A DNA stretch of 64,000 bases. Source: Octopus bimaculoides. Its lineage: Eukaryota. The stretch is taken from assembly GCF_001194135.2 (NCBI RefSeq), contig NC_069003.1, forward strand, positions 432,061 through 496,060, given 5' to 3'. A program made the translations under genes and the position numbers. Each line of letters starts with the position of its first letter. Position 1 is the first letter of the stretch. A model generated the notes under the pieces. That model was not told where the DNA came from and searched no databases. It was given only the letters and a program-made list of their open reading frames with translations. This document shows, piece after piece, positions 54,882 to 54,950 of this stretch.

Positions 54882-54950
54882 CTGATATTCTGTTCGACAA
54901 GAAATTTCTGAAGAAATTCAACTTACCTGGAAAAGAGAGAAAAATAATTG
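54882..54950 (-). promoter_or_regulatory. Candidate recursive splice site 2 (3'ss|5'ss junction at 54927/54926) with 45-nt RS-exon 54926-54882
   Basis: Minus strand reads ATTATTTTTCTCTCTTTTCCAG|GTAAGTTGAATTTCTTCAGAAATTTCTTGTCGAACAGAATATCAG|GTAAAC; upstream AG-free zone over 100 nt. Confidence 0.7.

What the first reader, a model, noticed from the sequence alone, without database searches (positions are those of the whole stretch)
54882..54950. RS site 2: 45-nt in-frame RS-exon that could also be a coding microexon
The exon is 45 nt, so frame-preserving. It is open only in phase 1 (xGT-KLNFFRNFLSNRIS-G); the other frames stop at once (TGA, TAA). The AG-free zone exceeds 100 nt and contains CTAAAC, a possible branch site. 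It could toggle between zero-length recursive use and insertion of a 15-aa peptide.
Basis: partly seen in the sequence, partly recalled or inferred. Interest (0 to 1): 0.75.

Follow-up and report, generated by a model that had tools for sequence, protein, structure and literature searches.

The report
Likely recursive splice site, not coding
On the minus strand there is a textbook "ratchet point", an intron-end signal fused to an intron-start signal and followed by a short 45-base cryptic exon, which probably helps remove a very long intron in steps; nothing found here indicates that the 45 bases encode protein.

Summary
On the minus strand a 16-nt pyrimidine tract and CAG (G at 54927) abut GTAAGT (54926-54921). 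A second donor, CAG|GTAAAC, follows 45 nt later, and the AG-free zone upstream is 124 nt.

The fused acceptor|donor is far beyond chance. It and an almost identical site at 20816 (-) score 30.5 bits on my approximate splice matrices. The next best site on either strand scores 19.3. Reversed decoys reach 23.2, and 400 Markov nulls never reach 30.5.

Both sites have TT at -5/-6 and a donor 38-45 nt downstream. They point the same way, 34.1 kb apart, in a window with no detectable coding exon. This is the anatomy of a Drosophila-type intronic ratchet point with a cryptic RS-exon.

The coding-microexon idea has no positive support:
- A multiple-of-3 length is a 1-in-3 event.
- The xGT-AAG frame is open in 47% of random 45-mers.
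- That frame is part of a 133-codon chance open stretch running through both splice sites.
- One of the two "immediate stops" is the TAA inside GTAAGT.
- The sister RS-exon is 38 nt, so it shifts the frame.
- The ratchet donor (12.9 bits) beats the exon donor (7.8 bits), which predicts skipping.
- No database protein carries the peptide.

Host gene, strand, intron phase, expression and conservation could not be tested.

The parts
54929..55052 (-). AG-exclusion zone (124 nt) upstream of the recursive acceptor. It is AT-rich with (AAT)n-like repeats; (AAT)5 lies at 54987-55001.
   Evidence: previous AG at 55054-55053.
54981..54986 (-). It is distal (A about 55 nt from the AG) and not a YTRAY match.
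54950..54956 (-). TAATAAC: overlapping TAAT and TAAC motifs with branch-candidate A residues 27 and 24 nt from the 3' splice site. These are better-placed branch-site candidates (inferred).
   Evidence: Sequence. Distance counted by hand. Branch use not tested.
54929..54944 (-). Uninterrupted 16-nt polypyrimidine tract TTTTTCTCTCTTTTCC, with TT at -5/-6.
   Evidence: The TT rule is from Duff et al..
54927..54928 (-). Recursive 3' splice-site AG. Its acceptor score of 17.6 bits ties with the twin as the best on either strand.
54921..54926 (-). Ratchet-point donor GTAAGT, which becomes a 5' splice site once the upstream exon is ligated. It scores 12.9 bits in genomic context.
54882..54926 (-). 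45-nt cryptic RS-exon. It is open only in the xGT-AAG frame, which reads KLNFFRNFLSNRIS.
54876..54881 (-). RS-exon donor CAG|GTAAAC. At 7.8 bits it lacks G at +5 and is weaker than the ratchet donor.
20818..20834 (-). Twin site: 17-nt pyrimidine tract TTTTTCTCTTCTTTTCC, preceded by an (AAT)n tract at 20835-20867.
20810..20817 (-). Twin ratchet point AG|GTAAGT, with the junction at 20816/20815.
20778..20815 (-). Twin's 38-nt RS-exon. Its length shifts the frame.
20772..20777 (-). Twin's RS-exon donor AAG|GTAAGA (10.5 bits).

Best explanation
This is an intronic ratchet point, a zero-length recursive splice site, with a cryptic 45-nt RS-exon. It lies in a very long intron of a minus-strand transcript and is one of at least two such sites 34.1 kb apart.

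Inferred mechanism:
1. The 45-nt unit is recognised by exon definition. U2AF and U2 bind the 16-nt pyrimidine tract and AG at 54927. U1 binds the GTAAAC donor at 54881.
2. The upstream exon is ligated to 54926. This removes the first intron segment and re-creates a consensus donor, exon|GTAAGT.
3. The regenerated strong donor outcompetes the weaker GTAAAC donor. It is spliced to the next acceptor, which is the twin site at 20816 or the true downstream exon. The 45 nt therefore leave with the next lariat and add nothing to the mRNA.

The open reading frame across the 45 nt is most likely coincidental.

Shown here: the anatomy, its statistical excess and the twin site. Inferred: transcription of this strand, intronic location, and actual use of the sites.
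For: - The core (Y)16 CAG|GTAAGT scores 30.5 bits here and at the twin. The next best real site scores 19.3 and decoys reach 23.2. The order-3 Markov null gives 0.05 sites of at least 25 bits per window, never 2, and never reaches 30.5. The strict pattern has 2 hits against 0.05 expected.
- Both sites are on the minus strand and have TT at -5/-6. Duff et al. found this in 196 of 197 Drosophila ratchet points.
- The 34,111-nt spacing falls within the 2.6-63.6 kb range of Drosophila recursive segments.
- Both have a good donor 45 or 38 nt downstream (P = 0.053 and 0.009 by chance). This matches the ~50-nt cryptic RS-exon described in PMC8605326.
- The ratchet donor at 12.9 bits is stronger than the RS-exon donors at 7.8 and 10.5 bits. 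Under the donor-competition model this predicts skipping.
- The two sites share a 27/28-nt identical core, yet their flanks beyond the AAT tract show no similarity (z = -0.2 and -0.4). That is the pattern expected when only the splice signals are constrained.
- The surrounding sequence is unique within the window.
- No coding exon is detectable anywhere in the 64 kb: no Pfam hit in 11.3k aa of open segments and no plausible acceptor-ORF-donor unit. This is consistent with a giant intron.
Against: - No host gene, transcribed strand or flanking exon could be identified. The window could be intergenic, or the sites could be antisense to the gene.
- No RNA evidence and no cross-species conservation could be obtained. 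ORFs from this window are absent from the protein and contig collections.
- The identical T/C order of the two pyrimidine tracts, together with an (AAT)n tract directly upstream of both, is more than splicing function requires. It hints at common descent, either by duplication or from a repeat family.
- My splice matrices are approximations written from memory of metazoan consensus frequencies. They are not trained on this species.
Confidence: 0.55

Rival explanations
1. An expressed, in-frame coding RS-microexon of the Ubx mI/mII type. The 45 nt are sometimes retained by using the GTAAAC donor, which inserts [S/R/G/C]-KLNFFRNFLSNRIS into the host protein.
For: The length is 45 nt and one frame is open. 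A precedent exists: the Ubx 51-nt RS-microexons are expressed and coding.
Against: - Open plus in-frame is expected in about 0.33 x 0.47 = 16% of random RS-exons.
- The open frame continues for 133 codons through the intronic AAT tract, both splice sites and the (GT)n repeat.
- The exon's GC content is 0.31, the same as intron-like sequence.
- The exon donor is about 5 bits weaker than the ratchet donor.
- The twin's RS-exon is 38 nt.
- No protein in the 5.8-billion-cluster database shares three 5-mers with the peptide region. The caveats are that 90% clustering hides isoforms and that species coverage is unknown.
- It would also require a phase-1 host intron inside the coding sequence.
Confidence: 0.04
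2. A regulated non-coding or poison RS-exon of the vertebrate type. The 45 nt are included in a subset of transcripts, for example after an alternative upstream exon. Depending on phase they then introduce a stop (TGA or TAA in two of three frames) or sit in a UTR, and so tune expression.
For: The anatomy is the same as in the best explanation. Two of three frames stop within 3 codons. The vertebrate RS-exon and poison-exon logic is summarised in PMC8605326 and PMC6224609.
Against: The strong ratchet donor against a weak exon donor predicts near-complete skipping. There are no expression data.
Confidence: 0.1
3. Repeat-derived sequence with no splicing role. Read on the plus strand, ...CAACTTACCTGGAAAAGAGAGAAAAAT followed by (ATT)n looks like the 3' end of a retroposon with a microsatellite tail. 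The two sites would then be two short copies of one family.
For: The two sites have identical 27/28-nt cores, including the T/C order, and both abut an (AAT)n/(ATT)n tract. The window carries other dispersed repeats and degenerate reverse-transcriptase fragments.
Against: - Only two copies occur in 64 kb, and none at up to 3 mismatches elsewhere.
- Similarity ends about 28 nt into the supposed body, and the flanks are unrelated.
- No flanking target-site duplications were found.
- Neutral decay that erased the flanks should also have degraded the core.
- A repeat origin does not explain why each copy also has a good donor 38-45 nt downstream in non-homologous sequence.
Confidence: 0.13
4. A non-functional coincidence, or sites lying antisense to or outside any transcript. 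They are strong splice-like signals that are never used.
For: No transcript, host gene or conservation evidence could be obtained.
Against: Two 30.5-bit sites against a null that never reaches that score. Both are in the same orientation and both have downstream donors (joint chance about 5e-4).
Confidence: 0.15

Closest known systems
Drosophila intronic ratchet points with cryptic RS-exons (Burnette 2005; Duff et al. 2015; Joseph et al. 2018, 2021)
   Same: Juxtaposed (Y)n CAG|GTAAGT, a prominent pyrimidine tract and TT at -5/-6. A short (~50 nt) cryptic exon ends in a weaker donor. There are several sites per region in one orientation, tens of kb apart. The twin's RS-exon is out of frame. 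Sources.
   Different: The organism is not Drosophila. An (AAT)n tract lies directly upstream of both sites, and the two cores are nearly identical. I did not find either feature described for fly ratchet points in the passages of the two recursive-splicing papers that I read. Use, host intron and conservation are untested.
Ubx microexons mI/mII (expressed 51-nt coding RS-exons)
   Same: A short exon whose length is a multiple of 3 and which begins with a regenerated donor. In principle it can be either kept or removed recursively.
   Different: [quoted passage not shown] Here there is no evidence of conservation or expression, the exon donor is weak, and the composition is intron-like.
Vertebrate RS-exons (Sibley et al. 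2015; Blazquez et al. 2018)
   Same: An RS-exon defined first and then removed through the regenerated 5' splice site. Inclusion would usually introduce a premature stop.
   Different: Vertebrate cases are mostly annotated or conditionally included exons whose recursive donor is repressed by the exon junction complex. Fully suppressed intronic sites are few. The consensus-perfect motif here is closer to the fly type.

Membership tests
Intronic ratchet point / zero-nt recursive splice site (Drosophila type) | Juxtaposed strong acceptor and donor: pyrimidine tract, N, CAG|GTAAGT | tested here: met
   TTTTTCTCTCTTTTCCAG|GTAAGT. It scores 17.6 + 12.9 bits, tied with the twin as the best on either strand, and is far above the nulls.
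Intronic ratchet point / zero-nt recursive splice site (Drosophila type) | TT at positions -5 and -6 (196 of 197 fly ratchet points) | tested here: met
   The sequence cttttccag is present at both sites.
Intronic ratchet point / zero-nt recursive splice site (Drosophila type) | Downstream donor that defines a short (~50 nt) cryptic RS-exon | tested here: met
   CAG|GTAAAC at +45, and the twin's AAG|GTAAGA at +38. Chance is 0.053 and 0.009.
Intronic ratchet point / zero-nt recursive splice site (Drosophila type) | Ratchet donor stronger than the RS-exon donor, so the exon is skipped | tested here: met
   12.9 against 7.8 bits on an approximate matrix.
Intronic ratchet point / zero-nt recursive splice site (Drosophila type) | Lies on the sense strand inside a long intron (flies: over ~11 kb) | tested here: inconclusive
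   No coding exon or Pfam domain was found on either strand in 64 kb. Both sites are on the same strand. The host gene and strand were not identified.
Intronic ratchet point / zero-nt recursive splice site (Drosophila type) | Core highly conserved between species, flanks and RS-exon body poorly conserved | not testable with these tools
   No related eukaryotic genome is reachable, and window ORFs are absent from the collections. Only a comparison within the window was possible: the core is 27/28 identical and the flanks are unrelated.
Intronic ratchet point / zero-nt recursive splice site (Drosophila type) | Recursive junction reads, sawtooth nascent-RNA profile, and lariats from the ratchet donor | not testable with these tools
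   No RNA-seq data are available.
Expressed coding RS-microexon (Ubx mI/mII type) | Length a multiple of 3 and open in the host reading phase | tested here: inconclusive
   The exon is 45 nt and open in one frame only. The host phase is unknown. The chance expectation is about 16%.
Expressed coding RS-microexon (Ubx mI/mII type) | Peptide or exon present in mRNA or protein records | tested here: not met
   No protein shares three 5-mers with a 40-aa query containing KLNFFRNFLSNRIS. Caveats: representatives are clustered at 90% identity, and species coverage is unknown (one search also returned nothing).
Expressed coding RS-microexon (Ubx mI/mII type) | Whole-exon conservation, including wobble positions | not testable with these tools
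   No orthologous sequences are available. The twin's exon body is unrelated.
Expressed coding RS-microexon (Ubx mI/mII type) | Exon donor or exonic enhancers able to compete with the regenerated donor | tested here: not met
   The exon donor lacks G at +5. It scores 7.8 against 12.9 bits. Enhancers were not assessed.

The most novel reading that the evidence does not exclude
The two sites are members of a propagated ratchet-point cassette: an (AAT)n branch-site-like array, a fixed 27-nt TTTTTCTCT(T)CTTTTCCAG|GTAAGTTG core, and a nearby donor. The cassette would have spread by duplication or transposition and been retained to subdivide giant introns in this, presumably cephalopod, lineage. This would be a new way for recursive splice sites to originate, in a phylum where recursive splicing was not found described in the searched open literature. 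The stronger form adds that the 45-nt exon also serves as an Ubx-like coding microexon.
Probability: 0.08. Interest if true: 0.7.

Novelty: new member of a known kind. Interest (0 to 1): 0.35.

Why it matters
Recursive splicing is documented in flies and vertebrates. I found no open-access paper linking it to octopus, cephalopods or molluscs. If these two consensus-perfect sites are used, they would show that the fly-type ratchet-point mechanism, including the exon-definition step, operates in another lineage with giant introns. They would also give concrete coordinates to test with total RNA-seq or lariat mapping. The coding-microexon twist would matter only if the host intron is phase 1 and the exon is conserved, and nothing here points that way.

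Tried and rejected
1. Host gene search. I took all stop-to-stop segments of at least 45 aa without low complexity, on both strands (164 segments, 11.3k aa), plus the 130-aa ORF at 42179-42571. None had a Pfam hit at E <= 0.1. Scans for acceptor-ORF-donor units and for ORFs next to the strongest minus-strand sites gave nothing protein-like.
2. RNA genes as strand markers. Rfam at gathering thresholds and tRNA scans found nothing.
3. Other assemblies or orthologous DNA through exact ORF look-ups. The 129-aa ORF across the site and 10 other window ORFs are not in the collections.
4. Lineage and database-coverage check with a degenerate reverse-transcriptase fragment (51207-51590, minus strand). 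There were no hits, so the organism remains unverified.
A 40-aa read-through query found no candidate.
6. Transposable-element or segmental-duplication origin. blastn of +/-1 kb between the two sites aligns only about 74 nt around the junction. The flanks show no similarity. There are no further copies and no target-site duplications.
7. The shared 9-mer TGTTAGCTT and 8-mer GTTATTAT, and the microsatellite downstream of both sites, first looked like collinear homology. I rejected them as chance after the flank tests. Microsatellites occur about every 700 bp here.
8. The large inverted repeats are artefacts of N-run gaps.

Full report
**What is there.** The finding lies on the minus strand. It reads...(AAT)n-rich tract... 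ttatttttctctcttttccAG|GTAAGTTGAATTTCTTCAGAAATTTCTTGTCGAACAGAATATCAG|GTAAACcaatg...(GT)n.
- The G of the acceptor AG is at 54927.
- The 45-nt unit spans 54926-54882.
- The next GT starts at 54881.
- Frame 0 stops at codon 3 (TGA) and frame 1 at codon 1 (TAA). The xGT-AAG frame reads KLNFFRNFLSNRIS.
- The AG-free zone is 124 nt, and CTAAAC lies at 54986-54981.

**Is the fused acceptor|donor more than chance?** Yes.
- The pattern YYYYYNYAGGTAAGT occurs twice in the window against 0.05 expected, both times on the minus strand: here and at 20810-20824.
- I scored every AG|GT with approximate metazoan acceptor and donor matrices that I wrote myself, not trained on this species. These two sites score 30.5 bits each.
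- The next best site on either strand scores 19.3. Reversed-sequence decoys reach 23.2.
- In 400 order-3 Markov simulations the mean number of sites at 25 bits or more was 0.05. None had two such sites and none reached 30.5.
- The two sites also hold the best acceptor score (17.6) and the best donor score (12.9) on the minus strand.

**Anatomy compared with known recursive sites.** Duff et al. [quoted passage not shown] They report TT at -5/-6 in 196 of 197 cases. Recursive introns are 11-133 kb, and the removed segments are 2.6-63.6 kb.
- Both sites here read cttttccag|GTAAGT, so TT at -5/-6 is present.
- They are 34,111 nt apart and point the same way.

Joseph et al. 2021 (PMC8605326) add three further features:
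- Each ratchet point is the start of a short (~50 nt) cryptic RS-exon closed by a downstream donor.
- The ratchet donor normally outcompetes that downstream donor.

Both sites fit this description.
- Site 54927 has CAG|GTAAAC at +45 (7.8 bits). Site 20816 has AAG|GTAAGA at +38 (10.5 bits).
- The chance of such donors within 25-100 nt is 0.053 and 0.009.
- Both exon donors are weaker than the 12.9-bit ratchet donor.

**Context.** No coding exon is detectable in the 64 kb.
- 11.3k aa of clean open segments from both strands gave no Pfam hit.
- No acceptor-ORF-donor unit looks protein-like.
- Rfam and tRNA scans are empty.

The window is AT-rich (about 33% GC), packed with microsatellites, and has 16 N-gaps. 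This fits a draft scaffold inside a giant intron or an intergenic desert. I could not identify the organism or the host gene. Window ORFs are not in the protein or contig collections, and a degenerate reverse-transcriptase fragment found no relatives.

**Repeat or duplication?** The two sites share TTTTTCTCT(T)CTTTTCCAG|GTAAGTTG, identical at 27 of 28 positions, and both have an (AAT)n tract directly upstream.
- blastn of +/-1 kb aligns only about 74 nt around the junction.
- The flanks beyond the AAT tract show no similarity (z = -0.2 and -0.4).
- Neither site has any other copy in the window.
- No target-site duplications flank them.

A perfect core with unrelated flanks is what selection on the splice signals would leave, whether the sites arose independently or by an old duplication. 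However, the identical order of T and C in the pyrimidine tracts and the shared (AAT)n tract are more than function demands. (AAT)n tracts are common here, about 20 in the window, but one directly upstream of both sites is not expected. A repeat-family origin, such as a retroposon 3' end with an (ATT)n tail on the plus strand, is therefore not excluded. I give it about 0.13.

**The coding-microexon claim.** I found nothing in favour beyond "45 nt and one open frame".
- A length that is a multiple of 3 has P = 1/3.
- With GTAAGT fixed, the xGT-AAG frame stays open over 45 nt in 47% of random draws from this window. The combination is therefore expected in about 16% of RS-exons.
- One of the two "immediate stops" is the TAA inside GTAAGT itself.
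- The open frame is not exon-specific. It is part of a 133-codon stop-to-stop stretch (54574-54972) that runs through the AAT tract, both splice sites and the (GT)n repeat.
- The exon's GC content is 0.31, like intron sequence.
- The twin's RS-exon is 38 nt, which shifts the frame.
- Donor competition predicts skipping.
- A 40-aa query containing the peptide found no protein sharing even three 5-mers among 5.8 billion cluster representatives. This is weak evidence, because 90% clustering hides isoforms and species coverage is unknown. The 14-mer alone could not be searched.
- The known precedent is the pair of Ubx mI/mII 51-nt exons. They are conserved over their whole length, including wobble positions. 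That could not be tested here.

**Branch site.** CTAAAC is about 55 nt upstream and does not fit YTRAY. TAAC and TAAT motifs lie 24 and 27 nt from the AG, at more usual distances (by inspection). Which one is used, if any, is unknown.

**Verdict.** The best explanation (confidence about 0.55) is a zero-length recursive splice site with a cryptic, normally skipped 45-nt RS-exon, paired with a twin 34 kb downstream on the same strand. The coding reading is unsupported (about 0.04).

I found no open-access paper linking recursive splicing to octopus, cephalopods or molluscs. If the window is cephalopod and the sites are used, this is a new member of a known kind, not a new mechanism. Annotation, total RNA-seq or lariat mapping, and cross-species alignment would settle it.

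Noticed in passing
window 20772-20867 (-): A second consensus-perfect recursive-type site, TTTTTCTCTTCTTTTCCAG|GTAAGT, with its junction at 20816/20815. It has a 38-nt frame-shifting RS-exon and a GTAAGA donor at 20777, and is preceded by (AAT)n.
   Followed up: yes
window 45784-45919 (+): A perfect tandem duplication of a 68-nt unit (2.0 copies, 100% identical). It could be a very recent duplication or an assembly artefact.
   Followed up: no
window 51207-51590 (-) and 46982-47146 (-): Degenerate fragments resembling a non-LTR reverse transcriptase (motifs like SRPISLM and DVIYLDYS). 51209-51304 is about 90% identical to 47038-47133, and 46854-47010 also gives a reverse-strand self-match (about 82% identity). 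They had no Pfam hit and no database relatives.
   Followed up: partly
window 40669-40759 (+) and 39074-39173 (-): An inverted pair (85% identical) of a short element containing a 'ggttcga(a/t)' string that looks tRNA-like by eye and carrying an (AAT)n/(AAC)n tract. It resembles a SINE. Other dispersed repeat pairs: 41134-41313 with 21264-21438, 14954-15108 with 6744-6886, 24901-25134 with 6554-6793, and 43889-43989 with 25131-25228.
   Followed up: partly
window 9108-9535, 29149-29876, 34141-34687, 36076-36182, 58864-59204 and 11 other N runs: There are 16 assembly gaps totalling 7,308 N. The largest 'inverted repeats' and several long 'ORFs' reported by the mechanical tools are artefacts of these N runs.
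   Followed up: yes
window 42000-44000: The most GC-rich stretch of the window (0.45), with CT-rich and proline-rich low-complexity sequence and a 130-aa ORF on the plus strand (42179-42571). It has no Pfam hit and no clear splice-site framing. It could be a promoter or UTR-like island, or nothing.
   Followed up: partly
whole window: (AAT)n tracts are unusually frequent, about 20 in 57 kb of called sequence. Both recursive-type sites have one immediately upstream of the pyrimidine tract. A role as a branch-site array is my speculation.
   Followed up: partly
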